From the IMG/VR virus record IMGVR_UViG_3300020477_000990, positions 264,150-328,149 of that record: 64,000 nucleotides of DNA. One strand, given 5' to 3'. A program made the position numbers and the translations under genes. This document shows, in pieces, positions 11,565 to 64,000 of this stretch (positions are counted from its first letter, which is position 1; each line of letters begins with the position of its first letter). Below the pieces are notes generated by a model. That model was not told where the DNA came from. It did not search any database and was given only the letters and a program-made list of their open reading frames with translations.

Positions 11565-11568
11565 CATT

Positions 11569-12727: not shown

Positions 12728-12728
12728 C

Positions 12729-12804: not shown

Positions 12805-12805
12805 T

Positions 12806-12882
12806 GGAGTGTTAGCTCAACTGGTTAGAGCACCCGCCTGTCACGCGGGAGGTTGAGGGTTCGAGTCCCTTACACTCCGCCA
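12806..12882 (+). tRNA. tRNA-Asp(GTC)
   Basis: Arm CCCGC-CTGTCAC-GCGGG; CCA encoded. Confidence 0.95.
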
Positions 12883-22885: not shown

Positions 22886-22895
22886 GGAGATGAAT

Positions 22896-26628: not shown

Positions 26629-26637
26629 ATATATAAA

Positions 26638-29739: not shown

Positions 29740-31022
29740 TGGACAATCAAGCATGGAAGAAACGTGATTGGGATTGGCACAAAACAATCACTAAAAAATG
29801 TGTAGCACCTTGGCATAGTTTAACTATCGAATGGGATGGTGAAGTATATGCTGATGCTGTGGCGTTTAAACCATATGGAAGTATATATGAAAATACTTTA
29901 ACTGAATTATGGAATTCTCCAAAAGCAGTTAATCTTCGTAAATCATGGAGCAAAGGATTGCCAGATAATATAATATGTGCTAGTTGTATAAAGAAAGAAG
30001 AAACAGTAGGTAGTTCTAGACGACAATACTTTTATAGAAATTTGCCATCTGAATTATTAAAAACAGCAACATATGATCCAGAGCAAAAACCTAATATATG
30101 GTATTTAGAAATTAACTCATCAAATAAATGTAATTTAAAATGTAGAATGTGTAATGGGCAAGTTTCAAGTACTTGGATTAAAGAAGAAACACAATTAGCA
30201 AAAATATCTCCTAGTTGGATGCCAAAAAGAAAAAATGGAAAATACTCTAGAGTTGATTTTGATGTTATTAAAAATGTTTTAGAAAAAAGAGAATATTTTA
30301 AAGATTTGCAATTTTTAAAGTTAACAGGCGGTGAGCCATTAATGGAAGAACAAAATTATCAATTAATGGAACAATTTATTGAATGGGATATTGCAAAAAA
30401 TGTTATGCTTGATATTAACACTAACGGAACATTTATGAATGAAAGATTAATAAACATTGCTAAACATTTTAAATTAGTTAAGTTACATATAAGTTTAGAA
30501 GGAACAGGAGAGTTATATCAATATATACGTGGTGGAGAAAACTTTACTTTAGATCAATTAGAAACAAATATAATTGAATTCAACAAGTTACCAAATACAG
30601 TAATAATTTATACTGTTACAGTACAAATATATAATATTTTTAATTTATCAGATATATGGAATTGGTATTTAAAAATAAGAAAACCAACTAATGAAATTTA
30701 TTTTAAAAATGTTGTAGTTAATCCTCCACATTTAAATTTTCAAATATTACCTAATAGTTTAAAGTTAGAAGCATATGAAATAATGAAACAAGCAGATTTA
30801 CCACAAGGTGAGTATTGGGAATTAGATGATTTTAGTCAAGGTGATATAGGATTTAGCAATATTATGAAGAATTTACAGAATCTAAATACATATAACGAGC
30901 AACGTTTAAAAGAGTTTGTCCAGTTTACACGTGATATTGATACTATAAGAAAAACGGATATTAAAAAAATTGTCCCGCAATTAGCAGGATTATTTGAGGA
31001 AGTATATGAAGCAAGAGCCTAA
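29739..31022 (+). CDS. radical SAM protein with N-terminal twitch-like domain
   Basis: CVAPW, CASC, CNLKCRMC, TGGEP. Confidence 0.88.
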   Translation: MDNQAWKKRDWDWHKTITKKCVAPWHSLTIEWDGEVYADAVAFKPYGSIYENTLTELWNSPKAVNLRKSWSKGLPDNIICASCIKKEETVGSSRRQYFYRNLPSELLKTATYDPEQKPNIWYLEINSSNKCNLKCRMCNGQVSSTWIKEETQLAKISPSWMPKRKNGKYSRVDFDVIKNVLEKREYFKDLQFLKLTGGEPLMEEQNYQLMEQFIEWDIAKNVMLDINTNGTFMNERLINIAKHFKLVKLHISLEGTGELYQYIRGGENFTLDQLETNIIEFNKLPNTVIIYTVTVQIYNIFNLSDIWNWYLKIRKPTNEIYFKNVVVNPPHLNFQILPNSLKLEAYEIMKQADLPQGEYWELDDFSQGDIGFSNIMKNLQNLNTYNEQRLKEFVQFTRDIDTIRKTDIKKIVPQLAGLFEEVYEARA

Positions 31023-32223
31023 AACATTTTGTATTTTGCCATGGATGCATTTAGCAACAAATTCTAGTGGAAATTATAGAGTATGTTGTAATTCAACTCC
31101 AGGTAAAAATTTTATTTTAGATAAAAATGGTGAGCCTTATAAAATTTATAAAGCTGATATTAAAGAAATGTGGAACTCTGAAACATATAGAAATTTACGT
31201 TTGCAACTACTTAAAGAAGAATATCCAGATATGTGTCAACGTTGCTGGAGAGAAGAAGCAAGTGATATTAAATCTGCTCGTCAAAGTTTTAACGAAGCAT
31301 ATTCACATTTTATTGATGGAGCATTATCAAATACAGATATAGAAGGTAAAGCACCATTAAAAGTAGGGTATGTTGATTTACGTTTAGGAAACTTATGTAA
31401 TTTAAAATGTCGTATGTGTAATCCATGGGCAAGTAACCAATGGACTAAAGAATGGAATAAAACAACATCATATGATGGTAAAGATATACCAGAAGATGAA
31501 CGTACGAGATTAGAGCATATGGATTGGCCCACAAATGAAAAAACGTGGGAAAACTTAATGCCAATTATAGATTCAGTAGAAGAAATTTACTTAACAGGTG
31601 GAGAACCTACATTAGCATTAGAACAATATAAGTTATTTGATAAATGTATTGAATTAGACAAAGCAAAAGATATTGTATTAAAGTATAATACTAATTTAAC
31701 TAATATACCACCTAAAATGATTGAGTATTGGAAAAACTTTAAAAAGATTAAGATTAATGCTTCAATAGATGGGTTTGATGAGCTTAATAGATATATTAGG
31801 TATCCAACAAATTGGAAGTCAGTTGATAAAAATCTTAAAATATTTCATGAAATAGAAAAAGAAGGTAAAATGAGAGTGCAGATTCATACTACTGTACAAT
31901 TATATAATATACTTGATATAACAGATTTATTTGAATATGTTGATCAGTTTGGTTATTTTCCGTATTTAAATATATTAGATCATCCAGATTACTTAAATGT
32001 AAGAGTGTTGCCATTGCACCTTAAAGAATGTGTAGCAGAAGAATTACAAAAGTATATTGATAAGCCAAAAGTAAAAGGGTTAATAACTTATATGATGGAC
32101 GAAGATTGGTCACAGCATACAGATAAATTTATTGAATATACTAATTGGCTAGATAAATCACGTAAGCAAAATGTTCTTGATATTGTTCCTGGATTAGAAG
32201 ACATAATAAATTTAAAAAAATAA
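31006..32223 (+). CDS. radical SAM protein with N-terminal twitch-like domain
   Basis: FCILPW..RVCC..CQRC, CNLKCRMC, TGGEP. Confidence 0.88.
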   Translation: MKQEPKTFCILPWMHLATNSSGNYRVCCNSTPGKNFILDKNGEPYKIYKADIKEMWNSETYRNLRLQLLKEEYPDMCQRCWREEASDIKSARQSFNEAYSHFIDGALSNTDIEGKAPLKVGYVDLRLGNLCNLKCRMCNPWASNQWTKEWNKTTSYDGKDIPEDERTRLEHMDWPTNEKTWENLMPIIDSVEEIYLTGGEPTLALEQYKLFDKCIELDKAKDIVLKYNTNLTNIPPKMIEYWKNFKKIKINASIDGFDELNRYIRYPTNWKSVDKNLKIFHEIEKEGKMRVQIHTTVQLYNILDITDLFEYVDQFGYFPYLNILDHPDYLNVRVLPLHLKECVAEELQKYIDKPKVKGLITYMMDEDWSQHTDKFIEYTNWLDKSRKQNVLDIVPGLEDIINLKK

Positions 32224-32514: not shown

Positions 32515-32589
32515 GACCCCTTCGTCTATCGGTTAGGACATCAGGTTTTCATCCTGAAAAGAGGAGTTCGATTCTCCTAGGGGTCGCCA
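32515..32589 (+). tRNA. tRNA-Glu(TTC)
   Basis: Arm TCAGG-TTTTCAT-CCTGA; CCA encoded. Confidence 0.93.
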
Positions 32590-43053: not shown

Positions 43054-44060
43054 AAAAAATAGTATGTTTAGGGACTAGTCATACTTATGGTGGAGCAAAT
43101 GAACGAAACTATACATTTGATGAAGCATGGCCAGGACAGTTAAGTAAGTATCTTAAAGACAATGGTGTTGATAATTATGTTTATAACGGAGGTGAAAGTT
43201 CTTTTTCATCTTTCTTCTATCCAACTAAAATTATAAATTTTTATAATGAATATAAACCAGATATGTTTGTTATTGAAGTACCTGATACAGATAAAGTTGA
43301 TATTGAAATATCAAGTGCTATTACAGGGCATTATATTAAAAAGCATGGCGGAAGAGATAGTAAGCCGTATCATCCAATTTATGCAAGGCAAAGAGTACTA
43401 ACACAAGATTGGGAACGTGGAGAACAATATAATTGGCCCAATAGAAAAAGTATATCTAAAGGTGAAGCAGTAGATTTTTATCATGGAGCAGACACTACAG
43501 TAAAAATTAAAGAATTTTTTAAAGGTGAAACAGGAAGAGCAGTAAAAGAATTTTATGAAAGTGCTAGTTTAGGTGATCATGAAAGAGATAATGTTAAAAG
43601 AAAATTTAATGAGTTATACACAGCCTTAGGAAGAAATGATGAAAATTTTAAAGCAATGCTGGCTTATTGTTATTTTCATTCAGTATTCATAGATATGAGT
43701 GACTTTGAAGTATCTTGTTATCTTGCAAATTTAATGAATATAATTAATACTTTAAAAATGTTGAATGTTAAATTTTCGTTGCATTCACACGTAAACAGAC
43801 AGCATTGGTTAGATCATTTTATATATAAAGAAACATATGAGCCAATTATTAATAAACCAGACTATTGGATGACAGGTGATATGGATTGGTCTGTAAAAAA
43901 ATGGGCAATAGATAAATGCACGTCAAATAATCGTAGTGATAAAGAAGCACAAGAAGAATGGGAGAAAATGAAATCAGATAAAGTTCATTTTCATCCATGG
44001 GTTTATACAATGCTTATTGATGAAGTGTTTGGACCAGAAATATTAAGAAAGTTAAAATAA
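43050..44060 (+). CDS. SGNH/GDSL hydrolase-like protein
   Basis: CLGTSHTYG block I and C-terminal DKVH. Confidence 0.55.
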   Translation: MKKIVCLGTSHTYGGANERNYTFDEAWPGQLSKYLKDNGVDNYVYNGGESSFSSFFYPTKIINFYNEYKPDMFVIEVPDTDKVDIEISSAITGHYIKKHGGRDSKPYHPIYARQRVLTQDWERGEQYNWPNRKSISKGEAVDFYHGADTTVKIKEFFKGETGRAVKEFYESASLGDHERDNVKRKFNELYTALGRNDENFKAMLAYCYFHSVFIDMSDFEVSCYLANLMNIINTLKMLNVKFSLHSHVNRQHWLDHFIYKETYEPIINKPDYWMTGDMDWSVKKWAIDKCTSNNRSDKEAQEEWEKMKSDKVHFHPWVYTMLIDEVFGPEILRKLK

Positions 44061-45112
44061 TGAGAATTAATAACGAACCAAAATTAAATTTTGAAGACGT
44101 TTTATTACAGCCAAAACGTTCTACACTACAATCACGTAAAGATGTTGATATGATGCGTAAATTTACTTTTCGAAATTCAAAAAAAGTATTAAGTTTTTTA
44201 CCTATTTTTGCAAGTAATATGGATGGTGTTGGTACATTTAGTATGGCAAAAGTATTACAAGAATATAAAATGATGACAGTAATAACAAAAACTACTACTC
44301 CAGATCAATGGAAAGAAGCAGTAGGGTCAGGATTAAGATTACAATCAGTTGCAGTATGTACTGGTACAAATAAAATGTTTGATGATGAAGCAGAAGATTA
44401 TACTAGTATGCAACGAGTATTAGATAGTTTTCCTGATATTAAATTTATTTGTATTGATGTTGCCAATGCTTATCATCAAAATATGGTTGGGTTTGTAAAA
44501 AAAGTAAGAGAAGAATATCCAGATAAAGTTATTATAGCAGGTAACGTAGTTACACCTGAAATGACAGAAGAATTAATTATTAGTGGTGCTGATGTAGTTA
44601 AAATTGGAATAGGACCAGGTAGTGTTTGTACAACAAGAACAATGGCTGGTGTAGGAGTTCCACAATTTTCAGCAATACTAGAATGTGCAGATGCGGCCAA
44701 TGGTGTTGATGGACACATAATGGCAGATGGCGGATGTACAACACCTGGTGATATTGCAAAAGCATTAGGTGGAGGTGCCCATATGGTAATGATCGGCGGT
44801 ATGTTAGCAGGGCATGATGAATCAGAAATCCCATCTACTGATGGGAAACGAGAATTCTACGGTATGAGTTCAGATCGTGCAAGAGAAGTACACGGTAAAA
44901 GAAAAGATGGCTATAGAGGTAATGAAGGAAGATTAATTCATTTACCTGATAGAGGTCCAGTTAAAGATACAGTAGAAGATATACTTGGGGGTGTAAGAAG
45001 TGCTTGTACATATATTGGAGCAAGAAGATTAAAAGATATGCCTAAATGTGCTACCTTTGTTACAACTCAAAATATAATTAACAGGGTATACGAAAACTAT
45101 ACTCAAAAATAA
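44060..45112 (+). CDS. guaC: GMP reductase
   Basis: DVLLQPKRSTL, NMDGVG, GIGPGSVCTTR, FYGMSS, GGVRSACTY. Confidence 0.95.
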   Translation: MRINNEPKLNFEDVLLQPKRSTLQSRKDVDMMRKFTFRNSKKVLSFLPIFASNMDGVGTFSMAKVLQEYKMMTVITKTTTPDQWKEAVGSGLRLQSVAVCTGTNKMFDDEAEDYTSMQRVLDSFPDIKFICIDVANAYHQNMVGFVKKVREEYPDKVIIAGNVVTPEMTEELIISGADVVKIGIGPGSVCTTRTMAGVGVPQFSAILECADAANGVDGHIMADGGCTTPGDIAKALGGGAHMVMIGGMLAGHDESEIPSTDGKREFYGMSSDRAREVHGKRKDGYRGNEGRLIHLPDRGPVKDTVEDILGGVRSACTYIGARRLKDMPKCATFVTTQNIINRVYENYTQK

Positions 45113-45124
45113 TTAGGGGGGTGT

Positions 45125-46060
45125 ATGAAAATAATCGCCGGGCAAAGTAATAGAAATTTAGCAGAATCTATTGCAGAGCATTGTTTTACTAGTTTAGTTC
45201 CTGCTAACATTGGAACATTTGCAGACGGCGAATGTTCAGTTGAATTATTAGAGAATGTTCGAGGAGAAGATTGTTTTATAATTCAATCAACAAGTTCACC
45301 AGTTAATGATAATTTAATGGAATTGTTAATTATGATTGACACACTTAAAAGAGCATCAGCGAAACGTATTACAGCAGTTATGCCATATTTTGGTTATGCA
45401 AGGCAAGATAGAAAGAGTGCATCACGTACTCCTATTACGGCAAGATTAGTTGCTAACTTATTAACTGAAGCAGGTGCAAATAGAATTTTAACAATGGATC
45501 TTCATGCTGGGCAGATACAAGGATTTTTTAATATACCTGTTGATGATTTAACATCTAGATTATTGTTTGTAAAAGATATTAAAAGGAAATTGCAAGATGA
45601 AGCAACTAAAACAGTTTTTGTATCACCAGATGCAGGAGGAGTTGTAAGGGCAAGAAAATTTGCAGATGCATTTAGTGGCATGATTGCAATTGTTGATAAA
45701 AGAAGATCAAGACCAGGTGTTAGTGAAGCTATGCACGTTATTGGTAATGTAAGAGATAAACACGCAATATTAGTTGATGATATGGTAGACTCAGGCGGCA
45801 CACTTTGTAATGCGGCAAAAATATTATTGGCCAAAGGTGCGTTAAGTGTAAGAGCATATATTACTCATGGAGTATTAACAAATGATTCTTGTAAAAAAAT
45901 TCAGGATAGTGATTTAAAAGAATTGGTTATAACAGATTCTATAAAATATAATTGTCCTCCAGAAATTACAAAAATTAAAATAGTATCAATTGATAAATTG
46001 TTTGGAGAAGCTCTTAGAAGAGTAACAAATGAGGAATCAGTAAGTACCTTATTTTCTTAA
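45125..46060 (+). CDS. prs: ribose-phosphate pyrophosphokinase
   Basis: [33 protein letters not shown]. Confidence 0.96.
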
Positions 46061-46100: not shown

Positions 46101-46367
46101 ATGTCTATTAAAAACAAAGCAAAAGAGGATCTTGAAATAATTGATATTACCTTATTGTTAAGGCAAAGGCGATGTCGAGATTCGATAGATGAAGAATTAC
46201 AAAAAATGCAGATGTATGATTCCTATTATGGAGATGCGGACATTATATTAGAAGGTAAGATATATCGTTTACAGCCATTTGTAATTCATAGAAGAACAGG
46301 TAAAAGAATAGATGTATTGTATAATGAAGATACACACAAAGTCGAAGCTCATATTATTCCGCAGTAG
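46101..46367 (+). CDS. hypothetical protein (3' end overlaps tRNA-Asn)
   Basis: ORF after TAAATA at about 46070; the stop codon lies inside the tRNA. Confidence 0.5.
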   Translation: MSIKNKAKEDLEIIDITLLLRQRRCRDSIDEELQKMQMYDSYYGDADIILEGKIYRLQPFVIHRRTGKRIDVLYNEDTHKVEAHIIPQ

Positions 46368-46433
46368 CTCAGTTGGTAGAGCAGTTGACTGTTAATCAAT
46401 TGGTCGCAGGTTCGAGTCCTGCCTGCGGAGCCA
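46358..46433 (+). tRNA. tRNA-Asn(GTT)
   Basis: Arm GTTGA-CTGTTAA-TCAAT; CCA encoded. Confidence 0.95.
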
Positions 46434-50904: not shown

Positions 50905-50965
50905 GTTTTTAATTTTCTCTTGACAGTATAAATATGTATGTATATACATAGATTAAGGAATTGTC

Positions 50966-51354: not shown

Positions 51355-51498
51355 ATGGCGATAAAGAGTGTAGAATCAATTATCGATCATAAGCCTAAAC
51401 GCACTAGTCAAGGTGGCAAAAAACCAAAGATGTCATCAATGAATAAAGATAAAAGAAGAACATATAAGAAATATAGAGGGCAAGGTAGAGGTAAATGA
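51355..51498 (+). CDS. 47-aa highly basic phage peptide (not in ORF track)
   Basis: MAIKSVESIIDHKPKRTSQGGKKPKMSSMNKDKRRTYKKYRGQGRGK; SD GAGGAG; ATGA overlap with the next gene. Confidence 0.75.
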   Translation: MAIKSVESIIDHKPKRTSQGGKKPKMSSMNKDKRRTYKKYRGQGRGK

Positions 51499-54400
51499 AA
51501 TTAAACGAACTTATACAACCTAAAGGGACAAAAGCGTCATTTACATTTGGTAGATTTAATCCACCAACTAAAGGTCATTCTCATCTTTTAAATGTAGTTA
51601 AGAAAGCGGCAGGAACAGGTGATCATTATGTTTTCACAGGAAGAACAAATGATAAAGATCGTAATCCATTAAGATATGAAGATAAAATTACATTAATGAG
51701 AGCAATGTTCCCAACAATTAATATTGTAGATGATCCAAATGTAAAAAATCCTTGGCAGGCACTTGAAGAGTTAGGTAAGCATTATGATGATGTTACTTTA
51801 GTTGTTGGTTCGGATAGGCAACAAGATTTCCAATCTCAAATGAGACCATATATGAAAGAGTTTGGTATTAAAAATTTTCAAGTAATTAGTTCAGGAGAAC
51901 GTGATGCAGACTCAACTGATGTGCAAGGTATTTCGGCAACTAAAGCTAGAGCATTTGCTAGAGTAGGAGACTTTAAATCATTTTCACAAACAGTAGATGG
52001 TGGCGAAACACTTAAAAAAGAATTATATAATAAAGTAAGACAAGGTATGGGAGTTACTGAAAGTAAAAAGCCAGTACCACCTAAAAAACCAAATCCAGTT
52101 GCAAAACAATTAACAGATCCAAAATTTAGACCACAAACAGTTAAAGATAAGAAAAAAGAAATTGATAAAGGATATGTTAAGCACAAAGGCAAGGCGTATG
52201 ATATTAATGAAGCATATATTATGGATTTAAATCAAAACCAAGATTTACTTGTATTAAGAGTTAAAGACACAGATAAAAAAGGACATATAGAAGTTAGAGG
52301 TAAAAAGAATTATGAAACAGATGGGTATGATCCAAAAGATCCATTGCACAGAGTTTTAGATCAATTAGATGGAGCAACAGTTTCAAGATTATATTCAGAT
52401 GAAAAAGTAGTTTTAAATCCAAAAAATCCTAGAACAGCACCAACAATAAAAAAAGCACAAGAACTTATGAAAGAACAAGAGCCAAGTAAGCCAATTGTTT
52501 ATGTTGACATGGACGGCGTATTAGCAAACTTCTTTGAAGAGTATGCTAAATTGGCAGGAGTTAAATCAGGAAACTATAAAGATATTCCACCAGCTAAAAC
52601 AGACCCTACATTAAATAAAATGGTAGGTACAGATTTTTTTAATAGATTACCAAAGTTTCCAACAGCAGATAAATTATTGCAATTAGTTACATCGATGTTT
52701 GGTAGCTATTCAATTTTATCAGCACCATTAAGAGGTGATCATCAAAATAGTACAGCACAAAAACATAAATGGATACAACGTGAACTTGCTATTAAGCCAG
52801 ATAATGTTATTATAGTTGGAAGAAAAGATTCTTATGCTACACAGGCAGATGGCACACCTAATATATTAATTGATGATAGAGGAAGAAATGTTGAAGCATG
52901 GAGAAATAGAGGTGGGCTTGGAGTTAAGTATCAAGCTGATGAAGATCCTTTATCTAAAGTAGAACAAGCACTTACACAATTTAAAGGACAGTTTACTTTG
53001 AAAGAATGGGGCGGGCTAATTGTTAAGGGCATAAATACCACAGCAGATGTAGGTATGGATGCAATTAAAAAGCAGTCAGGAAAATTAGGATTTAAAGTTG
53101 ATAAACAAGGAAAGCCACCAATAATGAATACAAAAGGTCAAGCAGTAGTTAAACGTATGCAAGAGCAGTTAATTAAAATTAACGGTTCAAATAAAGATTT
53201 AACATTACAGCAACAAATAGATTTATTAGAAATTACTAAAGGTATTAAAAATATCGTTAAAGAAAGAAAAGCAAAAAGAGTTAAAAAAGCATCATCTAAT
53301 GCATCAGAAGTTCCATATCAAAATGATGCAGGAACAATGAGTTTACTTACACATCCTGGTACAGAGCTTTGGCAAAAAATGAAAGCAACATCTAAGCCAG
53401 GAACAGAAGAATGGTTTAAAACTTGGAGAACATTATCATACTTAACTAAAGGTAGAAAGAATCATTATATGTTACCTATTAAAGAAGAATTAGAAAAACT
53501 TTTAGTTAAGTATAAAATTATTAAAGAAAGTGATGTAGTTGATTTACAACAAGCAATTGCTAAAAGAGTTTCATCAGTAACTGATCCAGCACTTTTAAAT
53601 AAAATAGCAAGTATGTTACGTAGAAGTAATATTGGTAACATTTCAAGAATGGCATTTAAGCAAGACGAAGATGCGGCAAAATTTATTAATAGGTTATCAG
53701 AAATAATTGTAGGAATTGAAGTTCCAATAAATGATAAAATTGCGTTCCTTAGAAAATTTGGAAGATCTAATTTTATTAAACCTGAAGTACTATTTGATAA
53801 TAGTGGTGCAGTACATTCAATGGATGATTGGTGGGAAGGAACTGGATTTGCAACAACTATGTTTAAGTTAATGATAAACGATCCACAGCTTCAAGGAAAA
53901 TCAGCAGGTGAATCTGGACCAGGTGAAGTTGCAATAGCTTGTTTCCATAAAAAGATTTCAGTAGGTTCTGATCCATCAGCAGGATACGATTTAAAATGGG
54001 GTAATCAAGAAATTGAAGTTAAAACAAAAGCATCAGAAAAATCTAGTTCAGGTGGCGGACGTTGGACAGCATATGATGGTGCTCCATTAGAAACTTATTT
54101 ACAAAGTGGTCAAAGTTTATTAGATCCAGAAAAAGTTCCTGCAGGTGTTAGAGCAACAAAATCATCACGTGCTGGAACACAAATAAGTTTTGCAGAAGTT
54201 TTAAATAATCCACAATACTTAAAAGATCCTAATACACCGTTAACTCAACAACAACAAAAAGAAATTTTTGCAAAAGTATTAAAACAAGCATATCAAAGTG
54301 CACCTAATGAAATTATTAATACAGCATTAGCAAATTATCCTAACGTAACAGATAAAGATATTGCACAGGCGGCATTTGCTAGTTATAGAGTTAAGCAAGG

Positions 54401-54557
54401 ATTTCAGTCAATGCTATTAATGAAGGCATCAGGTGGCGGAATTAGTACAATACACTTTAGTGAATTAGATAAAGGAATTGATAATTTTAAAGTTAATGGT
54501 CCGTATGTACGTGGACAAAAGCAACGTGGAATGGATGTTCAAGCAACATTAAGGTAA
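51495..54557 (+). CDS. multidomain polyprotein: cytidyltransferase-like + HAD 5'-nucleotidase-like + PD-(D/E)xK-like
   Basis: GRFNPPTKGH (HxGH-type), VYVDMDGVLANF...LIDD (HAD), GPGE...D...EIEVK; N-terminal MKLNEL tag. Confidence 0.7.
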   Translation: MKLNELIQPKGTKASFTFGRFNPPTKGHSHLLNVVKKAAGTGDHYVFTGRTNDKDRNPLRYEDKITLMRAMFPTINIVDDPNVKNPWQALEELGKHYDDVTLVVGSDRQQDFQSQMRPYMKEFGIKNFQVISSGERDADSTDVQGISATKARAFARVGDFKSFSQTVDGGETLKKELYNKVRQGMGVTESKKPVPPKKPNPVAKQLTDPKFRPQTVKDKKKEIDKGYVKHKGKAYDINEAYIMDLNQNQDLLVLRVKDTDKKGHIEVRGKKNYETDGYDPKDPLHRVLDQLDGATVSRLYSDEKVVLNPKNPRTAPTIKKAQELMKEQEPSKPIVYVDMDGVLANFFEEYAKLAGVKSGNYKDIPPAKTDPTLNKMVGTDFFNRLPKFPTADKLLQLVTSMFGSYSILSAPLRGDHQNSTAQKHKWIQRELAIKPDNVIIVGRKDSYATQADGTPNILIDDRGRNVEAWRNRGGLGVKYQADEDPLSKVEQALTQFKGQFTLKEWGGLIVKGINTTADVGMDAIKKQSGKLGFKVDKQGKPPIMNTKGQAVVKRMQEQLIKINGSNKDLTLQQQIDLLEITKGIKNIVKERKAKRVKKASSNASEVPYQNDAGTMSLLTHPGTELWQKMKATSKPGTEEWFKTWRTLSYLTKGRKNHYMLPIKEELEKLLVKYKIIKESDVVDLQQAIAKRVSSVTDPALLNKIASMLRRSNIGNISRMAFKQDEDAAKFINRLSEIIVGIEVPINDKIAFLRKFGRSNFIKPEVLFDNSGAVHSMDDWWEGTGFATTMFKLMINDPQLQGKSAGESGPGEVAIACFHKKISVGSDPSAGYDLKWGNQEIEVKTKASEKSSSGGGRWTAYDGAPLETYLQSGQSLLDPEKVPAGVRATKSSRAGTQISFAEVLNNPQYLKDPNTPLTQQQQKEIFAKVLKQAYQSAPNEIINTALANYPNVTDKDIAQAAFASYRVKQGFQSMLLMKASGGGISTIHFSELDKGIDNFKVNGPYVRGQKQRGMDVQATLR

Positions 54558-54565
54558 ATATTATT

Positions 54566-54862
54566 ATGCGTATATTAGAAATTATAAGTGAAAATGACAG
54601 ACGTGATTTTATGAAACGTTTGGGTAAAACAGCGGCGGCTACAGCTGGTGCTTTAGCTTTAGGATCATTTGCACTTCCATCAAAAGCATGGCCTAGTGAA
54701 TTACCTGATAATTTTAACTTTATGGATGAGTTTTTAAGTGATAAAGTTTTAAATGATCCAAAATATAAAGAATTTAAATTAAATGGTGAAAAGCTTCTTG
54801 ATATGTTAAAGAATATAGAAAAAAATAAGTTAAAAAAACAGGATAAAGGCATAGACGTTTAA
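54566..54862 (+). CDS. putative internal head protein with internal Tat signal
   Basis: MRILEIISE followed by RRDFMK, a hydrophobic stretch and SKA. Confidence 0.6.
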   Translation: MRILEIISENDRRDFMKRLGKTAAATAGALALGSFALPSKAWPSELPDNFNFMDEFLSDKVLNDPKYKEFKLNGEKLLDMLKNIEKNKLKKQDKGIDV

Positions 54863-55114
54863 ATGAAAATTGGTGATATTATTACTGAAGAAGCTACAGT
54901 AGGATCTACTATGGCTGGTAATTTTGCGGCATTGGCATTTCCTATGACTCCTGGTACTACACATGATCAGGCTATTAAAGCAGTAGATCCATTCGGTAAA
55001 ATATTCAAAAATGCTAAAAAGAAACGTAAAGATATATGGAAAATGGGTTACAGCCCAGATGCTTTAGCATATAGGACTAAAGTGAAAGATATCTATCCTA
55101 TTTTAAAACGTTAA
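54863..55114 (+). CDS. putative internal head protein
   Basis: MKIGDIITEE tag. Confidence 0.55.
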   Translation: MKIGDIITEEATVGSTMAGNFAALAFPMTPGTTHDQAIKAVDPFGKIFKNAKKKRKDIWKMGYSPDALAYRTKVKDIYPILKR

Positions 55115-55145: not shown

Positions 55146-55655
55146 ATGAAATTAAACGAGCTATTTAAACCAGAACAATCATCGTCATTACAAGATTTTA
55201 AAGATTATTATGACAATGCTACTCAATCTATGATTACTAGAGTAAAAGCTGGTGAAAATTATCATGAAGTAATTAATCAATTAGCACGAGAGTTTGCATC
55301 ACAACATAGTGATAGTTACGAAATGTTTGATTTAATGGCTGACGGTTTAAAAAAGCGACATTGGGAAATGTTTTGGGATGAAAAAGAAGAAAAATCAGAA
55401 CCAGAAACACCTGTTGCAATAGTAGTACAACCAGATGAAAAAGAAGTTAAAGAATATGATGGTCCAGATGAAACCCAAGATAATCAAGGATATACAGATA
55501 AGGAAATTAAAATGGCATTTGGTATTTTAAATGATCCTAGATATAAGCAAGGTAATTATTCAGGAGCATACGCGGCCATTGAAAAAATTGCTAAAGGTTT
55601 AGCAAGTCATCCAAGTGTAGCAAACGCATTAAGACGAGCAAACGAGTCGGAGTAA
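55146..55655 (+). CDS. putative internal head protein
   Basis: MKLNELF tag; TAAATA upstream. Confidence 0.55.
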   Translation: MKLNELFKPEQSSSLQDFKDYYDNATQSMITRVKAGENYHEVINQLAREFASQHSDSYEMFDLMADGLKKRHWEMFWDEKEEKSEPETPVAIVVQPDEKEVKEYDGPDETQDNQGYTDKEIKMAFGILNDPRYKQGNYSGAYAAIEKIAKGLASHPSVANALRRANESE

Positions 55656-55659
55656 CGCC

Positions 55660-58134
55660 ATGCGTATCCACGAAGTTGCACCCCCAGGAAGAGAAAAGCA
55701 AGTAAAGAAACTTAAAAAGAAGTTTGATGATCCATCGGCGGCTTACGCCATTGCTTGGGCTCAACATAACAAACATGGTAAGCCTAAAAAAGAAACAAAG
55801 TATGCAAACGTTCCAGGAAGAGAATACGATGCAGATGATAGAGCAGAAGCAAAATTATGGTCTTTGCAAGATCGTAAATCAGCACTTTTAAAAAAATTAG
55901 ATAGAGTTGCAGGCGAAGGTGGCAAAGTTAATATTAATGATCCAATATATAAAGAATTACAAGCAGTTAAAAAAGCAATAGGAAATTTCAAAAAGCAAGG
56001 AATTGGCGAAGATAAAATTCCAAACGATATGCCTGGTATGGTTGGTGATAGTGCTTGGTATAAAAAAACAGGTCAATTAGTTAGAATAGTCGATTACACT
56101 CAAGATGGTAAAGATGGAATTTACACAATTTCATTTGGTGATGGCAGAGGTGAAATGGATGTATTGGTGCATGATTTAGAATTTATAGATGATACAACAT
56201 ATCAAGATTTACCAGACTATGGTGATACAGAAGATAATATGTCTGATATAGAAGCAGATGCAGATACACTAGCATCAGCTGGAATGGGTAGCGATGAAGA
56301 TTATGGCTACTATGGTGATAATGAATCAGTTGATCCTATTAGAAGTGATAGAGGTGCTAAAGAAGAATTAGCAAAAGAAATTTATTACAATGGATCTAGT
56401 GCAAAACATTATCAAAAAATGTATCCTACTTGGGAAGACTTTATGAACTCAGAAGACTTCGAAGAAGAAAATATGAGATTATGGAATAAGTTTGGTGAAA
56501 GTAAAAATGTTGAAATGTGTCCAGAAGCTTGTTGCGGTGTACCAGTAACAGAGTGTTCATGTGGTTCAGATTGTAAACATTGTGATTGTAATGCAAAAAA
56601 TAATGAAGTAAAAGAAGATTTAAAAAAATCATTAAATGAAAGAATGCCTGCTTCAGTTATTAAACATAAACAAAAACTTTCTTTTATGACTGATAAAGAA
56701 TTAGCAGATAGATTTAAAGATTTTGATGAAACAAGATTACGTCAAATGGCATGGAGACATGGCTATGGCAAAATGAGTTCACACTATTGGGATAGAGTAC
56801 AAGCTGGTAAAAACGAATCAGTAACTAATGAAGACCAAACAACAGTTGACGTTAAAGCAATATTAGACAAGCACGGTATTAAAAGTACATACGATATTGA
56901 ATATGGTTCAGATGCCTTTAGTGATTTATTTGATTATTTTTCAAGTGATCCTGATGAAATGCCATACGGTGTTCAAAAAGCAAGAACAGGAATGCCAGAT
57001 GAATGGATTGCAAATAGACTTATAGACTTAGGTTTACTTAAAGAAGCACCATTCCGAAGAAGATTTGCAACAAAAAGTAAAAATCCATTTAGCGGAACAC
57101 AAAAAGCATTAAACACATTAGGGTCAATGTTTGGTTCAAGAAAAGCACAAGGTAGATTAAACACAGGCGTTGAAGCAAATAAAATTGCAAAAGATTGGGA
57201 AGATTATACTTCAGGAGATACAGCAAGACAAATAAATAAAAACTTTAATGGATTTTTAGGTAGCATTGGAGGTAGTGGCAATCCTGAAACATCAGCAAAA
57301 TGGTTTCAAAAAAATCATAAAATAACAATTCCACCAGCTGACTATCAAAAAACTTTTAAACAAGATGGTACTCCACAAGAAAGAGATACAGTATTCAATA
57401 TTATAAAAAAGAGTTCATTAGACTCAGATAGTATTCAGACTTGGTTTAAAAATAATCATGGTATGGTACTTACGCAACCTGATGTAAATCAATTATTAGC
57501 AAATCCAAAAACAGCAATTATAGATTTTGTAAAAAGAAAAGAAGCAGGACAAATGGGTCCAAAAGCTGATGCAACAAAGCCAGAAACTAAACCAGATGCA
57601 CAAGGAGATTTATTTACAGGTGATGATCAAGCTGATCCAACATTAGCACAAATTAAAAAATTAAATCCAGATGCTTCACAAAAATCTGTGAAAGCATTAG
57701 ATAAACTTAAACCAGATGCACAAGGAAAAATGGCACCGTTAAATCCAGAAGAAGAAAAAGAATTAGCACCAATATTACAAAAGATAGGTGCGGCATTAAC
57801 TGATCCTGCTAAAAGAGCCAAGTTAGTAAATATGATGACGTCAGGTAAGTATAGTGATTTTAAAGATTTTACATCAATATTGAGTGAATCAATTAGTAGA
57901 GAAGAATTATCTAAATTGGATTATTTGGCTAGACAAGGACTAGTTCCAAGTTCTAAAGTATCAAGATTTAAGACAGCCATGCGTACACTTGCTAAAGGTA
58001 AAGACTTATCAATAACATATAAAAATGATGTAGTAGATGTAGTTGTTAAATTAGCTGGTATTATTACTAAACCTGGTGTAATGCAAATGGTTAGAAGGGG
58101 ACTAAATAAAGATAAGGGTAAAGGTAAAAAGTAA
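55660..58134 (+). CDS. putative internal head polyprotein with Cys-rich module
   Basis: MRIHE tag; modules separated by xxE-S/A/D sites; CPEACCGVPVTECSCGSDCKHCDC. Confidence 0.6.
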   Translation: MRIHEVAPPGREKQVKKLKKKFDDPSAAYAIAWAQHNKHGKPKKETKYANVPGREYDADDRAEAKLWSLQDRKSALLKKLDRVAGEGGKVNINDPIYKELQAVKKAIGNFKKQGIGEDKIPNDMPGMVGDSAWYKKTGQLVRIVDYTQDGKDGIYTISFGDGRGEMDVLVHDLEFIDDTTYQDLPDYGDTEDNMSDIEADADTLASAGMGSDEDYGYYGDNESVDPIRSDRGAKEELAKEIYYNGSSAKHYQKMYPTWEDFMNSEDFEEENMRLWNKFGESKNVEMCPEACCGVPVTECSCGSDCKHCDCNAKNNEVKEDLKKSLNERMPASVIKHKQKLSFMTDKELADRFKDFDETRLRQMAWRHGYGKMSSHYWDRVQAGKNESVTNEDQTTVDVKAILDKHGIKSTYDIEYGSDAFSDLFDYFSSDPDEMPYGVQKARTGMPDEWIANRLIDLGLLKEAPFRRRFATKSKNPFSGTQKALNTLGSMFGSRKAQGRLNTGVEANKIAKDWEDYTSGDTARQINKNFNGFLGSIGGSGNPETSAKWFQKNHKITIPPADYQKTFKQDGTPQERDTVFNIIKKSSLDSDSIQTWFKNNHGMVLTQPDVNQLLANPKTAIIDFVKRKEAGQMGPKADATKPETKPDAQGDLFTGDDQADPTLAQIKKLNPDASQKSVKALDKLKPDAQGKMAPLNPEEEKELAPILQKIGAALTDPAKRAKLVNMMTSGKYSDFKDFTSILSESISREELSKLDYLARQGLVPSSKVSRFKTAMRTLAKGKDLSITYKNDVVDVVVKLAGIITKPGVMQMVRRGLNKDKGKGKK

Positions 58135-58394
58135 TGAAAGATCAAATTATAATGTTACTAATAGGTATTTTAATTGCGTTAGGCGGTTGGAACCTTACCC
58201 AAACTTTTAGTTTATCAACTACTCAAGCAGTTATTGATGATAAAGTTGATAAATTAGAAAGAAGCGTCGAGAAATTGCAAGATCAAATGGATGATATGCA
58301 AAAAATGGATGAAGAGATTGTTGAACAACATGAAGATTTGTTTAGACAATTACAAGAAGGCAATACAGCACCATCAACAGGATATAATTACTAA
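58134..58394 (+). CDS. single-TM coiled-coil protein
   Basis: Hydrophobic N-terminus plus heptad repeats. Confidence 0.6.
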   Translation: MKDQIIMLLIGILIALGGWNLTQTFSLSTTQAVIDDKVDKLERSVEKLQDQMDDMQKMDEEIVEQHEDLFRQLQEGNTAPSTGYNY

Positions 58395-58783
58395 TGAAAA
58401 TACATGATATTATAAATGAAGACAATGTTATTGATCTTAAAGGCCCACAAGGTAATGCTTATTTCCTTTTAGGCACAGCTAAAAAATTAGCAAAAGATTT
58501 AAATCTTGATTACGACAAAATTCAAAAAGAAATGACTGCTTGTAATTACGATAATTTAGTAGATGTTTTTAAAAAATACTTTGGTGAATATGTTGATGTT
58601 AGAGAAAATGAACTTGGTGTGCCACGTATGAACAAGTATAACATTTATACAACAAAAAGCAAAGATGGTGATTTTCAGGCCTGGCAAGGTGAAAAACATC
58701 TTGGAACTTTTAAAACGATTCAAGATTTAAATAAATTTTGGGATCACGCAATAAACAGCGGAAAAATTAAACCTCAAGAGTAA
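58394..58783 (+). CDS. putative internal head protein
   Basis: MKIHDIINE tag followed by an IDLKGPQGNAYFLLG domain. Confidence 0.6.
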   Translation: MKIHDIINEDNVIDLKGPQGNAYFLLGTAKKLAKDLNLDYDKIQKEMTACNYDNLVDVFKKYFGEYVDVRENELGVPRMNKYNIYTTKSKDGDFQAWQGEKHLGTFKTIQDLNKFWDHAINSGKIKPQE

Positions 58784-59231: not shown

Positions 59232-59307
59232 GCCCTCTTAGCTCAGTTGGTAGAGCAACTGATTTGTAATCAGTAGGTCCGCAGTTCGAATCTGTGAGGG
59301 GGCACCA
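59232..59307 (+). tRNA. tRNA-Thr(TGT)
   Basis: Arm ACTGA-TTTGTAA-TCAGT; CCA encoded. Confidence 0.95.
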
Positions 59308-59701: not shown

Positions 59702-60634
59702 ATGAGAATATTTCCAAGCAAGGCTTTAATAGGCTTTTTAGCAGTAATATTTGCGTTTGTATTAGTCAGTTGTAGTGAAGCTGAAGCTGTAGAGACAAAA
59801 ATCTACGGTACGTTTAACTACAAATTGAGTAATGACGAGAATAGTTCTGGTACAAGTCATTTAAAGGCTGAAAACAACTCATCGTTGGTAGGCATTGACG
59901 CCGCTGAAGATATTGGCGAAGGCATAACTGGCTTTGCTAAATTAGAAGTAGGTGTTGATACTGATGATGGCAATAACAATCCTTTTGATTCACGTTTAGC
60001 TTATGTAGGCTTAAACTTTGGTCAACTAGGATCGATATCTGCAGGACGTCAGTCATCTCCATTTACTGATAATGTAAGTGGAATAACAAATGTATTTGAA
60101 GTTTATGGTTCAGGTGCAGATCAAAATTTGTTCACACGTGATGCAAATACGATCGCATACTCGAATCAAATGGCGGGAATTACATTTGATGGTCTAGCAA
60201 AGATAGACGGTTCTACAGGTAAGAATGGGATAGATGTTTCAGAAGCAACAGCTACCTATTCTACATTTGGAGTAACTGTAAGTGGTGGTGTATCAAATGA
60301 TCATGTAAATGATATTGATTACTACGGCGCTGGAGTATCTTATGATGCTTCGTCAATGGGTGTACCTGTAAGTGTAGGTTATACTTACACATATAAGGAT
60401 GCCGCAACTGATGTTACAGGCAATGAAATCATTGGATCTTATTCTGTTAGTAATGATTTAAAAGTTACTGGTGGATACGGTAAAATCGAAGATTCAACTG
60501 CATTTTATACAGCAGGAGCATCATATGGAATAACTGGTTCATTATCAACGTATGTTGAATATGAGCATCAAAACAAAACTGGATCAAATAACGATACAGA
60601 CAGTTATTCTACCGGTCTTAAATTTACATTCTAA
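59702..60634 (+). CDS. Gram-negative porin
   Basis: Signal peptide, IYG, S..G..E..G...AKLE, RLAYVGL..G.I.AGR, C-terminal GLKFTF beta-signal. Confidence 0.88.
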   Translation: MRIFPSKALIGFLAVIFAFVLVSCSEAEAVETKIYGTFNYKLSNDENSSGTSHLKAENNSSLVGIDAAEDIGEGITGFAKLEVGVDTDDGNNNPFDSRLAYVGLNFGQLGSISAGRQSSPFTDNVSGITNVFEVYGSGADQNLFTRDANTIAYSNQMAGITFDGLAKIDGSTGKNGIDVSEATATYSTFGVTVSGGVSNDHVNDIDYYGAGVSYDASSMGVPVSVGYTYTYKDAATDVTGNEIIGSYSVSNDLKVTGGYGKIEDSTAFYTAGASYGITGSLSTYVEYEHQNKTGSNNDTDSYSTGLKFTF

Positions 60635-63925: not shown

Positions 63926-64000
63926 GGGGGATTAGCTCAGCTGGGAGAGCGCCTGATTTGCATTCAGGAGGTCAGCGGTTCGATCCCGCTATCCTCCACC
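63926..64000 (+). tRNA. tRNA-Ala(TGC), last A cut by window end
   Basis: Arm CCTGA-TTTGCAT-TCAGG; G3-U70 pair; ends ...CCACC. Confidence 0.93.

What the first reader, a model, noticed from the sequence alone, without database searches (positions are those of the whole stretch)
51495..54557. Nucleotidyltransferase + HAD nucleotidase + PD-(D/E)xK-like domains in one tagged polyprotein
Seen: N-terminal GRFNPPTKGH cytidyltransferase-like domain, central DMDGV HAD domain and C-terminal GPGE..D..EIEVK nuclease-like motif, separated by basic linkers and Glu sites. Inference: if injected, these could act at once on nucleotide or NAD pools, signalling nucleotides or DNA, for example against host defence.
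Basis: partly seen in the sequence, partly recalled or inferred. Interest (0 to 1): 0.62.

Follow-up and report, generated by a model that had tools for sequence, protein, structure and literature searches.

The report
Tagged multi-enzyme head cargo polyprotein
A marine T4-like giant phage encodes a 1020-residue fusion of a nucleotidyltransferase, a nucleotidase and a restriction-enzyme-like nuclease whose N-terminal leader and Glu-ending domain junctions look like T4's signals for loading proteins into the capsid and cutting them, so it is probably enzyme cargo delivered with the DNA, though nobody has shown this.

Summary
Window 51495-54557 (+) is one 1020-aa ORF. It has a HIGH-type nucleotidyltransferase domain (Pfam CTP_transf_like; TKGH and SATKAR motifs) and a DUF7230 basic module. 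It also has an NT5C-type HAD nucleotidase with all four HAD motifs, and a conserved basic region with no confident predicted fold. The C-terminal domain has an invariant E811...D832...E841-x-K843.

The genome is a complete 328-kb T4-like phage with a gp21-type prohead protease and a gp23 capsid protein. The leader MKLNEL resembles the cleaved propeptides of T4 gp24 (MAKINELLRE) and Alt. Six of seven consecutive genes here carry such leaders.

L/I/V-x-E, the gp21 cleavage motif, is conserved at every domain junction. The C domain also exists as a stand-alone gene family (834 cluster representatives). About half of the listed members start with their own leader, at the point where the fusion reads KYKIIKE|S. 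A 34%-identical cyanophage homologue of the N domain was detected in virions by mass spectrometry (PMC10665884).

Best reading (about 0.55): this is capsid-targeted, protease-processed enzyme cargo, like T4 internal proteins or Alt. Packaging, cleavage and all substrates are inferred. The anti-defence role is untested. Novelty: a new variant of a known kind.

The parts
50927..50934 (+). TATAAATA, a T4-late-promoter-like box 39 nt upstream of ORF 50966. It is the likely start of the transcription unit that runs through the small ORF, the target and the tagged genes.
   Evidence: The genome has 25 copies on the + strand and 4 on the - strand, mostly 13-80 nt upstream of ORF starts, including the portal gene and the tagged head-module ORF. 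A TTGACA box overlaps it, so timing is not settled. No strong internal promoter or terminator was found up to about 58850.
51355..51498 (+). Small, very basic ORF (47 aa, pI 10.9). Its stop overlaps the target's start codon (ATGA).
   Evidence: Read from the sequence. It is conserved directly upstream of the homologues in L002 (47 aa) and L005 (45 aa), with 21 invariant positions. No Pfam match.
51495..51509 (+). N-terminal leader MKLNE (the tag; L-N-E fits the L/I-x-E motif).
   Evidence: M1, E5, L6 and P9 are at least 90% conserved in 22 homologues. Compare T4 gp24 MAKINELLRE and Alt MELITELFDE, translated from NC_000866. The gp21 cleavage rule and the Alt propeptide of 7 residues come from PMC9026906.
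51510..52061 (+). HIGH-motif (class I) nucleotidyltransferase domain, residues 6-189, ending in the invariant VTE189.
   Evidence: Pfam PF01467 over its cut-off, and PHROGs 3041/395. T25-x-G27-H28 and S147-A148...R152 are invariant. The weak PDB profile hits are PPAT and NMNAT. It is 34% identical (E 8e-26) to the S-CREM2 virion-detected cytidylyltransferase.
52062..52211 (+). Basic DUF7230 module, residues 190-239 (pI 10.0), ending in INE239.
   Evidence: PF23876 scores 28.9 bits against a cut-off of 27 when scanned alone and 28 bits in the genome scan. phrog_1359 also matches. Alignment A7.
52212..52475 (+). Variable insert, residues 240-327, found only in this protein and its 95%-identical relative.
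   Evidence: BLAST of the segment finds only P0001 and P0002. Homologues carry other inserts of different lengths here.
52476..53006 (+). NT5C-type HAD phosphatase (5'(3')-deoxyribonucleotidase-like), residues 328-504, ending in the invariant L-x-E504.
   Evidence: Pfam PF06941 over its cut-off and phrog_2643 at 1e-21. The four HAD motifs are D338-x-D340, S409, K444 and D460-D461, all invariant. The same domain (about 70% identity) is fused to CCA-adding-enzyme-like proteins elsewhere.
53007..53528 (+). Conserved basic region M, residues 505-678 (pI 10.0). It holds two near-invariant blocks, GINTTxDVG...GFKV...PP and PGTxxWFKTWRTLxYLTKGRKNHYMLP, and ends in IKE678.
   Evidence: Alignment A4. 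The AlphaFold2 model has pLDDT 56.5 and pTM 0.23, so there is no confident fold. No match in PDB, Pfam, the Atlas or the phage collection. Short-form homologues (560-680 aa) end after this region.
53529..54557 (+). C-terminal domain, residues 679-1020 plus the stop: a helical N-subdomain followed by a PD-(D/E)xK-like core (E811, D832, E841-x-K843, R856).
54566..54862 (+). Tagged ORF (98 aa): MRILEIISE|ND followed by a twin-arginine-like signal, RRDFMKRLGKTAAATAGALALGS.
   Evidence: Conserved in L002 and L005. No Pfam or PHROG match.
54863..55114 (+). Tagged ORF (83 aa), MKIGDIITE|E.
55146..55655 (+). Tagged ORF (169 aa), MKLNELFKPE, the same leader type as the target.
   Evidence: Its orthologue in L002 starts identically.
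55660..58134 (+). Tagged ORF (824 aa), MRIHEVAPPG. No known family.
   Evidence: Its orthologue in L002 is 571 aa.
58394..58783 (+). Tagged ORF (129 aa), MKIHDIINE|D.
   Evidence: phrog_1933, unknown function.

Best explanation
The gene encodes capsid-targeted enzyme cargo in polyprotein form, the counterpart in a marine T4-like jumbo phage of T4's internal proteins and Alt.

Proposed mechanism:
1. The gene is expressed with the downstream tagged genes, probably from a late-type promoter.
2. The N-terminal leader (M-K-L-N-E-L...) directs the 114-kDa basic protein (pI 9.5) into the prohead scaffolding core.
3. The phage's gp21-type serine protease then cuts after L/I/V-x-E. This removes the leader and probably separates the modules at VTE189, INE239, LKE504 and IKE678.
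4. The pieces stay in the head with the DNA and enter the host cell at infection. They are a PPAT/NMNAT-like nucleotidyltransferase, a basic DUF7230 peptide, an NT5C-type nucleotidase, conserved basic segments and a PD-(D/E)xK-type nuclease-like protein. There they could act before any phage gene is expressed.

Shown here: the domain identities and intact catalytic motifs, the T4-type protease and capsid genes, the leader and its clustering, the conserved junction motifs, and the modular occurrence of each part elsewhere.

Inferred: targeting, cleavage, ejection, every substrate and any anti-defence role.
For: 1. The genome is a complete T4-like phage. It has Peptidase_S77 (2.4e-27) and Gp23 (5.9e-97). 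The gene order is portal, two small tagged ORFs, an acidic protein, protease, scaffold, MCP. The MCP carries YLAE|A where T4 gp23 has FLTE|A.

2. T4 propeptides were translated from NC_000866: gp24 MAKINELLRE, Alt MELITELFDE, IPII/III MKTYQEFIAE. They share hydrophobic-x-acidic-hydrophobic-hydrophobic-x-E with the window's leaders. According to PMC9026906, gp21 cuts after L/I-X-E, and the first 10 residues of IPIII suffice for head targeting.

3. Six of seven consecutive genes are tagged, and two more tagged ORFs sit at the gp67/gp68 position of the head module. This resembles T4's diverse internal proteins, which share only the CTS (PMC3012670).

4. Hydrophobic-x-E is 86-100% conserved at all domain borders.

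5. Each module occurs alone or in other fusions:
- The C domain forms a stand-alone family. Of 146 listed members, 71 start with the strict leader. MRYKELKEVE|TDVVQLQ aligns with the fusion's KYKIIKE|SDVVDLQ.
- NT5C is fused to CCA-adding-like enzymes that start MRLNEVILHEE.
- DUF7230 is a 42-residue Pfam family.
- Tagged proteins of 1557-2074 aa end in the same C domain.

6. Cyanophage homologues start with T4-like leaders: MKKFSAFLKEA, MKLFNQFFKEAE, MKNFSSFLTEA. The S-CREM2 homologue (34% identity, E 8e-26) was found in purified virions by MS (PMC10665884). Homologues in non-T4-like jumbo phages lack the leader.

7. The protein is basic like the T4 IPs.
Against: - There is no proteomic, N-terminal or expression evidence for this protein or this phage.
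- The target's own leader lacks the second Glu of the T4 CTS (LIQP instead of xxE). In short-form homologues the leader runs straight into the first Rossmann strand, so part of it may simply be the enzyme's N-terminus.
- The gene lies about 110 kb from the head module, beside metabolic genes: GMP reductase, PRPP synthetase and an exonuclease. T4 ip and alt genes are also remote from the head genes.
- In relatives the leader also occurs on a PAP2 phosphatase and on a protein with a Tat-like signal. These are unusual head cargo.
- Hydrophobic-x-E is a short motif, and conserved copies also lie inside folded domains (E92, E349).
- The strong conservation of region M argues that it does more than act as a linker.
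- The S-CREM2 authors themselves caution that their MS detection (3 peptides) could be carry-over.
- TATAAATA also precedes non-structural genes such as EF-G and Hsp20, so late-type expression does not discriminate.
Confidence: 0.55

Rival explanations
1. It is an ordinary cytoplasmic multi-domain auxiliary enzyme of nucleotide metabolism, made during infection and never packaged. On this view the shared N-terminus reflects common descent of neighbouring genes or a preference at translation starts, and the junction Glu residues are just linker composition.
For: It sits in conserved synteny with GMP reductase, PRPP synthetase and an Rv2179c-like exonuclease. Two domains belong to housekeeping enzyme families. 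Region M is highly conserved, as expected of a functional part of one enzyme. No direct packaging data exist.
Against: - The leader is shared by unrelated proteins and varies in codons, not in residue class.
- It matches verified T4 propeptides and reappears at the head of stand-alone C-domain genes.
- It sits on small ORFs inside the head module.
- A homologue was detected in virions.
- Homologues in phages that are not T4-like lack it.
Confidence: 0.27
2. The N domain is an NMN/NaMN adenylyltransferase that rebuilds NAD+ together with the phage NAD synthetase. This would counter NAD-depleting defences in a NARP2-like way, whether or not the protein is packaged.
For: The weak best hits are NadD, NadR, NadM and PPAT. 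The same window encodes NAD synthase (PF02540, 2e-43) and PRPP synthetase. The only other CTP_transf_like gene in the genome is TagD-like. The cyanophage literature calls the family an NMNAT homologue.
Against: All NMNAT/NadD equivalog models fail by a wide margin (18 bits against a cut-off of 112; 14.6 against 341). The active-site motif is T-x-G-H as in PPAT, not H-x-G-H. The genome has no Nampt/NAPRTase or QPRTase to supply the mononucleotide. This reading does not explain the fused nucleotidase or the nuclease-like domain.
Confidence: 0.15
3. It is a nucleic-acid end-processing or repair enzyme. In this reading the HAD domain acts as a polynucleotide 3'-phosphatase (as in T4 Pnkp) and the PD-(D/E)xK domain as an endonuclease, working on broken tRNA or DNA.
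For: There is a weak PHROG hit of the HAD region to polynucleotide kinase (0.0015). The same HAD domain is fused to CCA-adding-enzyme-like nucleotidyltransferases with an RNA-binding domain. A nuclease-like domain is present.
Against: The HAD domain matches NT5C far better than Pnkp. There is no kinase or ligase domain. The N domain has the Rossmann-type HIGH fold, not a ligase or Pol-beta fold.
Confidence: 0.08

Closest known systems
T4 internal proteins IPI/IPII/IPIII and their capsid targeting sequence (CTS)
   Same: The leaders are short and have the same residue pattern. The genes form a cluster of otherwise unrelated proteins that share only the leader. The proteins are basic. The phage has a gp21-type protease that cuts after L/I-x-E.
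   Different: The cargo here is a 1020-aa multi-enzyme fusion, not a small protein. The target's leader lacks the terminal Glu of the 10-residue CTS. Internal junction sites suggest polyprotein processing, which is not described for the IPs. Nothing has been shown experimentally.
T4 Alt (ADP-ribosyltransferase packaged in the head and injected)
   Same: Both are large enzymes with an N-terminal propeptide (MELITEL...). Alt is cut by gp21 at both ends and delivered with the DNA to act at once on the host.
   Different: The enzyme families differ: here a HIGH nucleotidyltransferase, an NT5C HAD domain and a PD-(D/E)xK-like domain. Here there are several modules in one chain.
Virion-associated cytidylyltransferases of T4-like cyanophages (S-CREM2 ORF154; T4-GC 190 in P-SSM4, S-CRM01)
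   Same: The N domain is homologous (33-40% identity; E 8e-26 to S-CREM2). The homologues have CTS-like leaders and a conserved hydrophobic-x-E at the domain end. The S-CREM2 protein was reported in virions by MS.
   Different: The cyanophage proteins are 285-383 aa and have other C-terminal extensions. None has the HAD, M or nuclease-like modules.
Type II restriction endonucleases of the HinP1I/MspI/HhaI group (PD-(D/E)xK fold)
   Same: They are the best structural and language-model neighbours of the C domain. Both have an E...D...ExK arrangement on helix-strand-strand.
Ejection-protein processing in giant phages phiKZ/SPN3US
   Same: Many head-internal proteins are cut after Glu by a gp21-related protease and ejected into the host.
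   Different: Those phages use other site motifs and belong to a different lineage. The present phage has a canonical T4-type gp23 and S77 protease.

Membership tests
Cytidylyltransferase-like / HIGH nucleotidyltransferase superfamily (PF01467) | Profile match above the curated threshold | tested here: met
   30.9 bits against a cut-off of 21. 34.9 bits in the genome scan.
Cytidylyltransferase-like / HIGH nucleotidyltransferase superfamily (PF01467) | (H/T)xGH and ISxxxxR-type nucleotide-binding motifs | tested here: met
   T25-K-G27-H28 and S147-A-T-K-A-R152 are present. T25, G27, H28, S147, A148 and R152 are invariant or nearly so.
NMN/NaMN adenylyltransferase (NadD/NadR/NadM) or PPAT (CoaD) proper | Equivalog-level profile match | tested here: not met
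   TIGR00482 scores 18.3 against 112.45, TIGR01510 15.3 against 103.3 and TIGR01526 14.6 against 341. The PDB profile hits have E 0.013-0.07.
NMN/NaMN adenylyltransferase (NadD/NadR/NadM) or PPAT (CoaD) proper | Catalytic activity on NMN, NaMN or 4'-phosphopantetheine | not testable with these tools
   This needs an enzyme assay.
NT5C 5'(3')-deoxyribonucleotidase family of HAD phosphatases (PF06941) | Profile match above the curated threshold | tested here: met
   35.9 bits against a cut-off of 24.8. phrog_2643 at 1e-21.
NT5C 5'(3')-deoxyribonucleotidase family of HAD phosphatases (PF06941) | HAD motifs I-IV (DxDxV, S/T, K, DD) | tested here: met
   D338-M-D340-G-V, S409, K444 and D460-D461 are all invariant in 22 homologues.
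PD-(D/E)xK nuclease superfamily | Conserved acidic and lysine residues, E...(P)D...(D/E)xK | tested here: met
   E811, D832, E841 and K843 are invariant in 28 sequences that are 14-59% identical.
PD-(D/E)xK nuclease superfamily | Alpha-beta-beta-beta core with the motif on helix 1, strand 2 and strand 3, and significant structural similarity to known members | tested here: inconclusive
PD-(D/E)xK nuclease superfamily | Sequence-profile membership in a described family | tested here: not met
   No Pfam, NCBIfam or PDB sequence hit.
T4-type CTS-bearing head-internal proteins (IP/Alt class) | The phage encodes a gp21-type (S77) prohead protease and a T4-type head module | tested here: met
T4-type CTS-bearing head-internal proteins (IP/Alt class) | N-terminal leader of the CTS/propeptide pattern ending in L/I-x-E | tested here: inconclusive
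   The target has L-N-E at residues 3-5, like Alt's I-T-E at 4-6, but lacks the second Glu. The neighbouring ORFs fit fully, for example MKIHDIINE|D.
T4-type CTS-bearing head-internal proteins (IP/Alt class) | Presence in the virion and cleavage by the prohead protease | not testable with these tools
   The only evidence is indirect: MS detection of a 34%-identical cyanophage homologue.
NARP2-type NAD+ reconstitution (Nampt + NMNAT) | A partner nicotinamide phosphoribosyltransferase in the genome | tested here: not met
   PF04095 is absent from the complete genome, and the control genomes were positive. QPRTase is also absent.
DUF7230 (PF23876) | Profile match above the curated threshold | tested here: met
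   28.9 bits against a cut-off of 27 for residues 190-245 scanned alone. 28 bits in the genome scan. 23 bits when scanned within the whole protein.

The most novel reading that the evidence does not exclude
Marine T4-like phages, from pelagimyophage-like relatives and cyanophages to this 328-kb jumbo phage, may use a CTS-like leader plus L/I/V-x-E junctions as a plug-and-play system. Shuffled enzyme modules would be loaded into the capsid as polyproteins of up to about 2000 residues, cut apart by the prohead protease and delivered with the DNA.

The candidate modules are nucleotidyltransferases, NT5C nucleotidases, CCA-adding-like enzymes, a large unnamed PD-(D/E)xK family, PAP2 phosphatases and even proteins whose Tat signal would be exposed by leader removal.

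The target would then be a three-enzyme first-strike package acting on host nucleotides and nucleic acids.
Probability: 0.35. Interest if true: 0.78.

Novelty: new variant of a known kind. Interest (0 to 1): 0.62.

Why it matters
If the reading holds, it extends T4's capsid-targeting principle, so far known for a few small proteins and Alt, to a large and diverse arsenal of enzymes in abundant uncultured marine phages.

It gives a simple sequence rule for predicting what such phages inject: the leader plus Glu junctions.

It defines an unnamed nuclease-like family with more than 800 cluster representatives.

It offers a concrete explanation for the repeated but unexplained detection of 'cytidyltransferases' in cyanophage virions.

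It also proposes polyprotein processing of ejected cargo in a tailed phage, which a protease-substrate assay could test directly.

Tried and rejected
- **ArfA lead.** From memory, the DUF7230 linker resembled the ribosome-rescue factor ArfA. The Pfam ArfA model gives no match even at E 10 in the genome or in the protein scans. Dropped.
- **NARP2-type NAD+ salvage.** There is no Nampt/NAPRTase or QPRTase, so membership is not supported. It is kept only as a weak rival because NadE is present.
- **Paralogues of the modules elsewhere in the genome.** None found.
- **GenBank phage collection.**
  - No nucleotide match.
  - The protein search finds only N- or HAD-domain hits and no full-length relative.
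  - The DUF7230 linker, region M and the C domain give nothing.
- **Sequence searches for the C domain.** Pfam on 18 and on 28 members, NCBIfam and PDB profiles gave only chance-level hits.
- **Foldseek against the PDB.** No match at E 0.001 or better.
- **Region M.** The AlphaFold2 model has low confidence. There is no PDB, Atlas or family hit. Its role stays open.
- **Promoter and terminator scan.** Sigma-70 promoter and terminator matches were not above shuffled expectation.
- **Giant proteins with the same C domain.** Pfam finds only a borderline Amidoligase_2 match.


Full report
**What is there.** Window 51495-54557 (+) is one uninterrupted ORF of 1020 codons. The window is the last 64 kb of a complete 328,149-bp virus record with direct terminal repeats. 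It has about 31% G+C, and nearly all genes lie on one strand.

**Modules of the protein.**
- Residues 17-153 match Pfam CTP_transf_like above its threshold, and PHROG 'cytidyltransferase' families at 6e-46. The two signature motifs of HIGH-type nucleotidyltransferases are present and conserved: T25-K-G-H28 within GRFNPPTKGH, and S147-A-T-K-A-R152.
- Residues 190-239 are a lysine-rich segment (pI 10.0). Scanned alone, it passes the DUF7230 threshold.
- Residues 240-327 are an insert found only in this protein and one 95%-identical relative.
- Residues 332-473 match Pfam NT5C above its threshold. All four HAD motifs are invariant: D338xD340, S409, K444 and D460-D461.
- Residues 505-678 (region M) are basic and contain two almost invariant blocks. 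AlphaFold2 gives no confident fold (pLDDT 56.5), and no library recognises the region.
- Residues 679-1020 form the C domain discussed below.

**The C domain.** It has no Pfam, NCBIfam or PDB sequence match.
- In 28 sequences that are only 14-59% identical to it, G808, E811, D832, E841, K843 and Y964 are invariant.
- An AlphaFold2 model (pLDDT 78, pTM 0.73) puts E811 in a helix, D832 at the start of a strand and E841-x-K843 in the next strand. This is the canonical PD-(D/E)xK layout.
- Four searches that share no method are each weak, but they agree:
  - Foldseek's first hit is R.HinP1I, at E 0.54.
  - The language-model search names R.HinP1I, Eco47II, SmaI and ThaI clusters as the nearest annotated ones, at 0.82-0.84.
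  - After the family's own clusters, the Atlas shape search returns RAI1, YqaJ, PDDEXK_1 and alkaline exonuclease, at TM 0.21-0.28.

I take the domain to be a PD-(D/E)xK fold, probably a nuclease, with about 0.75 confidence. It is a new sequence family, not a member of a described one. A profile search of 1.84 billion representatives finds 834 members at E 1e-3 or better. Most are stand-alone proteins of 320-480 aa. Some are the C-terminus of proteins of 1557-2074 aa.

**What kind of phage.** The genome encodes a T4-type prohead protease (Peptidase_S77, 2.4e-27) and a T4-type major capsid protein (Gp23, 5.9e-97). The gene order is portal, a 131-aa ORF, a 66-aa ORF, an acidic 334-aa protein, protease, scaffold and capsid protein. 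This mirrors T4's 20-67-68-21-22-23 order. The capsid protein has YLAE|A where T4 gp23 has FLTE|A. TATAAATA, the T4 late-promoter box, occurs 25 times on the coding strand and 4 times on the other. Most copies lie 13-80 nt upstream of ORFs. One lies 39 nt upstream of ORF 50966, which is followed by a small ORF and then the target.

**The tag.** The target starts MKLNELIQP. The next genes start MRILEIISEND, MKIGDIITEE, MKLNELFKPE, MRIHEVAPPG and MKIHDIINED.
- With a simple pattern, 13 of about 453 crude gene calls in the genome are tagged. Six of these lie in seven consecutive genes, and none of 200,000 permutations reached that. Two more are the small ORFs between portal and protease.
- Codons differ while residue classes are kept, so selection acts on the peptide.
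- I translated the T4 genes from NC_000866: gp24 MAKINELLRE|S, Alt MELITELFDE|D, IPII and IPIII MKTYQEFIAE|A, and IPI MKTFKEF. The pattern hydrophobic-x-acidic-hydrophobic-hydrophobic-x-E is the same, and K-I/L-N-E-L is shared with gp24.
- According to PMC9026906, gp21 cuts after L/I-X-E, and the first 10 residues of IPIII suffice for head targeting. Virion proteins lose propeptides of 7 (Alt) to 65 (gp23) residues. The authors suggest that the CTS may be how T4-like phages incorporate varied proteins into their capsids.
- PMC3012670 describes the internal proteins as diverse defence-related proteins that share only the CTS.
- The same tagged gene run recurs in related metagenomic contigs, where it also includes a PAP2 phosphatase.

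**The polyprotein idea.** In 22 homologues, hydrophobic-x-E is conserved at E5, at VTE189 (100%), INE239 (95%), LKE504 (100%) and IKE678 (86%). These are the borders defined independently by the ends of domain matches. Each module also exists on its own or in other company:
- Short forms have N, HAD and M only.
- The HAD domain, about 70% identical, is fused to CCA-adding-enzyme-like proteins that start MRLNEVILHEE.
- DUF7230 is a 42-residue family.
- Stand-alone C-domain genes 50-60% identical to this one start MRYKELKEVE, MRFQDFKLVE or MRAFEFLKE.
- Across the wider family, 71 of 146 representatives match the strict leader pattern, and many more nearly do.
- The stand-alone start MRYKELKEVE|TDVVQLQ lines up with the fusion's VKYKIIKE|SDVVDLQ. 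The junction therefore looks like a retained leader.
- phrog_455 links another tagged ORF of this genome (664 aa) to the cytidyltransferase domain in other phages.

**Outside evidence for packaging.**
- The N domain is 33-40% identical to the 'cytidyltransferase' of T4-like cyanophages.
- Those proteins begin with T4-like leaders: P-SSM4 MKKFSAFLKEA, S-CRM01 MKLFNQFFKEAE and S-CREM2 MKNFSSFLTEA.
- Homologues in phages that are not T4-like (GAP32, Pseudomonas phage 30-3) start directly with the Rossmann strand.
- S-CREM2 ORF154 (E 8e-26 to the N domain) was detected in CsCl-purified virions by mass spectrometry.
- The authors note 'frequent detection' of cytidyltransferases in cyanophage virion proteomes, but they caution about carry-over (PMC10665884).

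**What the enzymes do.** This remains open.
- The N domain fails every NMNAT, NadD and PPAT equivalog by a wide margin. Its T-x-G-H motif is PPAT-like.
- The window encodes NAD synthase, and PRPP synthetase and GMP reductase lie nearby. The genome has no Nampt/NAPRTase or QPRTase.
- The second CTP_transf_like gene is TagD-like.
- A role in NAD metabolism is therefore possible but not supported as a pathway.
- The HAD domain is NT5C-like. Its substrate, whether dNMP, NMN or a polynucleotide 3'-phosphate, cannot be told from sequence.

**Verdict.** The domain calls hold. The 'tagged, Glu-cut, injected' reading is the best explanation on comparative grounds (about 0.55), but no step of it has been shown for this protein. 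The anti-defence role is speculation. The nearest known systems are the T4 CTS internal proteins and Alt. This is a new variant of that kind: larger, multi-enzyme, apparently processed at internal junctions, and built partly from an undescribed nuclease-like family.

Noticed in passing
window 54566-54862: This tagged 98-aa ORF carries a twin-arginine-like signal (NDRRDFMKRLGKTAAATAGALALGS) straight after the leader MRILEIISE. Removing the leader after Glu would leave a Tat-type signal at the new N-terminus. The ORF is conserved in L002 and L005.
   Followed up: partly
window 51355-51498: A conserved 47-aa, very basic ORF (pI 10.9) has a stop codon that overlaps the target's start (ATGA). It is present upstream of both long and short homologues. 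It loosely resembles the DUF7230 linker (NKDKKRxYKKY) but has no family match.
   Followed up: partly
window 1858-23480: The phage encodes cellular-type translation and proteostasis genes, all far above Pfam cut-offs: EF-G (1858-3927), ribosomal protein L11 (4690-5112), IF3 (10644-11201), ClpX (9376-10647), DnaK (15104-16996), ClpS (18959-19282) and ClpP (22869-23480). It also encodes PTPS/QueD (5552-6004) and NAD synthase (11533-12327).
   Followed up: partly
window 12651-12882, 32515-32589, 46358-46433, 59232-59307, 63926-64000: There are seven tRNA genes (Ile, Val, Asp, Glu, Asn, Thr, Ala), all on the + strand.
   Followed up: no
window 59702-60634: A phage-encoded Gram-negative porin (Porin_4, 6.6e-22) with a signal-peptide-like N-terminus. 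It is also present in the related contig L002.
   Followed up: no
window 44060-46060: GMP reductase (NCBIfam equivalog, 460 bits against a cut-off of 397) and ribose-phosphate diphosphokinase lie side by side. They are syntenic with the target in relatives.
   Followed up: partly
G000:C1:203534-204138 (L013:4535-5139): Two small tagged ORFs (MKIYEISNTD, 131 aa; MRYRELIKEN, 66 aa) sit between the portal and the prohead protease, where T4 has the core proteins gp67 and gp68. A 334-aa extremely acidic protein follows.
   Followed up: partly
G000:C1:247932-249926 (L014:1933-3927): This tagged 664-aa ORF (MKINDIKIDE) matches phrog_455 at 5.9e-86. The C-terminal part of that family profile matches the target's nucleotidyltransferase domain, so the two are fused in other phages.
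   Followed up: no
proteins P0113-P0121 (marine metagenome contigs): These are CCA-adding-enzyme-like proteins (PolyA_pol plus RNA-binding domain) fused to the same NT5C domain (about 70% identity). They start with the same kind of leader (MRLNEVILHEE), so they may be tRNA-end-modifying cargo.
   Followed up: partly
proteins P0170, P0222, P0231, P0277, P0262, P0308, P0310: These proteins of 1557-2074 aa start with a tag-like leader (MKAKDFKSLETLLKEYGM) and end in the same C domain. Pfam sees only a borderline Amidoligase_2 match. P0170 lies downstream of a gp41-like helicase and DUF6267, as the cytidyltransferase does in P-SSM4.
   Followed up: partly
G000:C1:15110-15682 (L021:1429-2001): A second CTP_transf_like gene in the genome has a TagD-like motif (FSTFDLFHSGH). 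It is probably a sugar- or glycerol-phosphate nucleotidyltransferase.
   Followed up: no
whole genome G000: TATAAATA shows a strong strand and position bias (25 on +, 4 on -, mostly just upstream of ORFs). This is consistent with T4-type late promoters. It also precedes the EF-G, cold-shock-like and Hsp20-like genes.
   Followed up: partly
window 8420-9383, 13151-14203, 25519-32223: Several ORFs have Cys-rich N-termini that look like radical-SAM/SPASM enzymes when read by eye. I did not scan them against any family library. Relatives carry Radical_SAM genes near the target.
   Followed up: no
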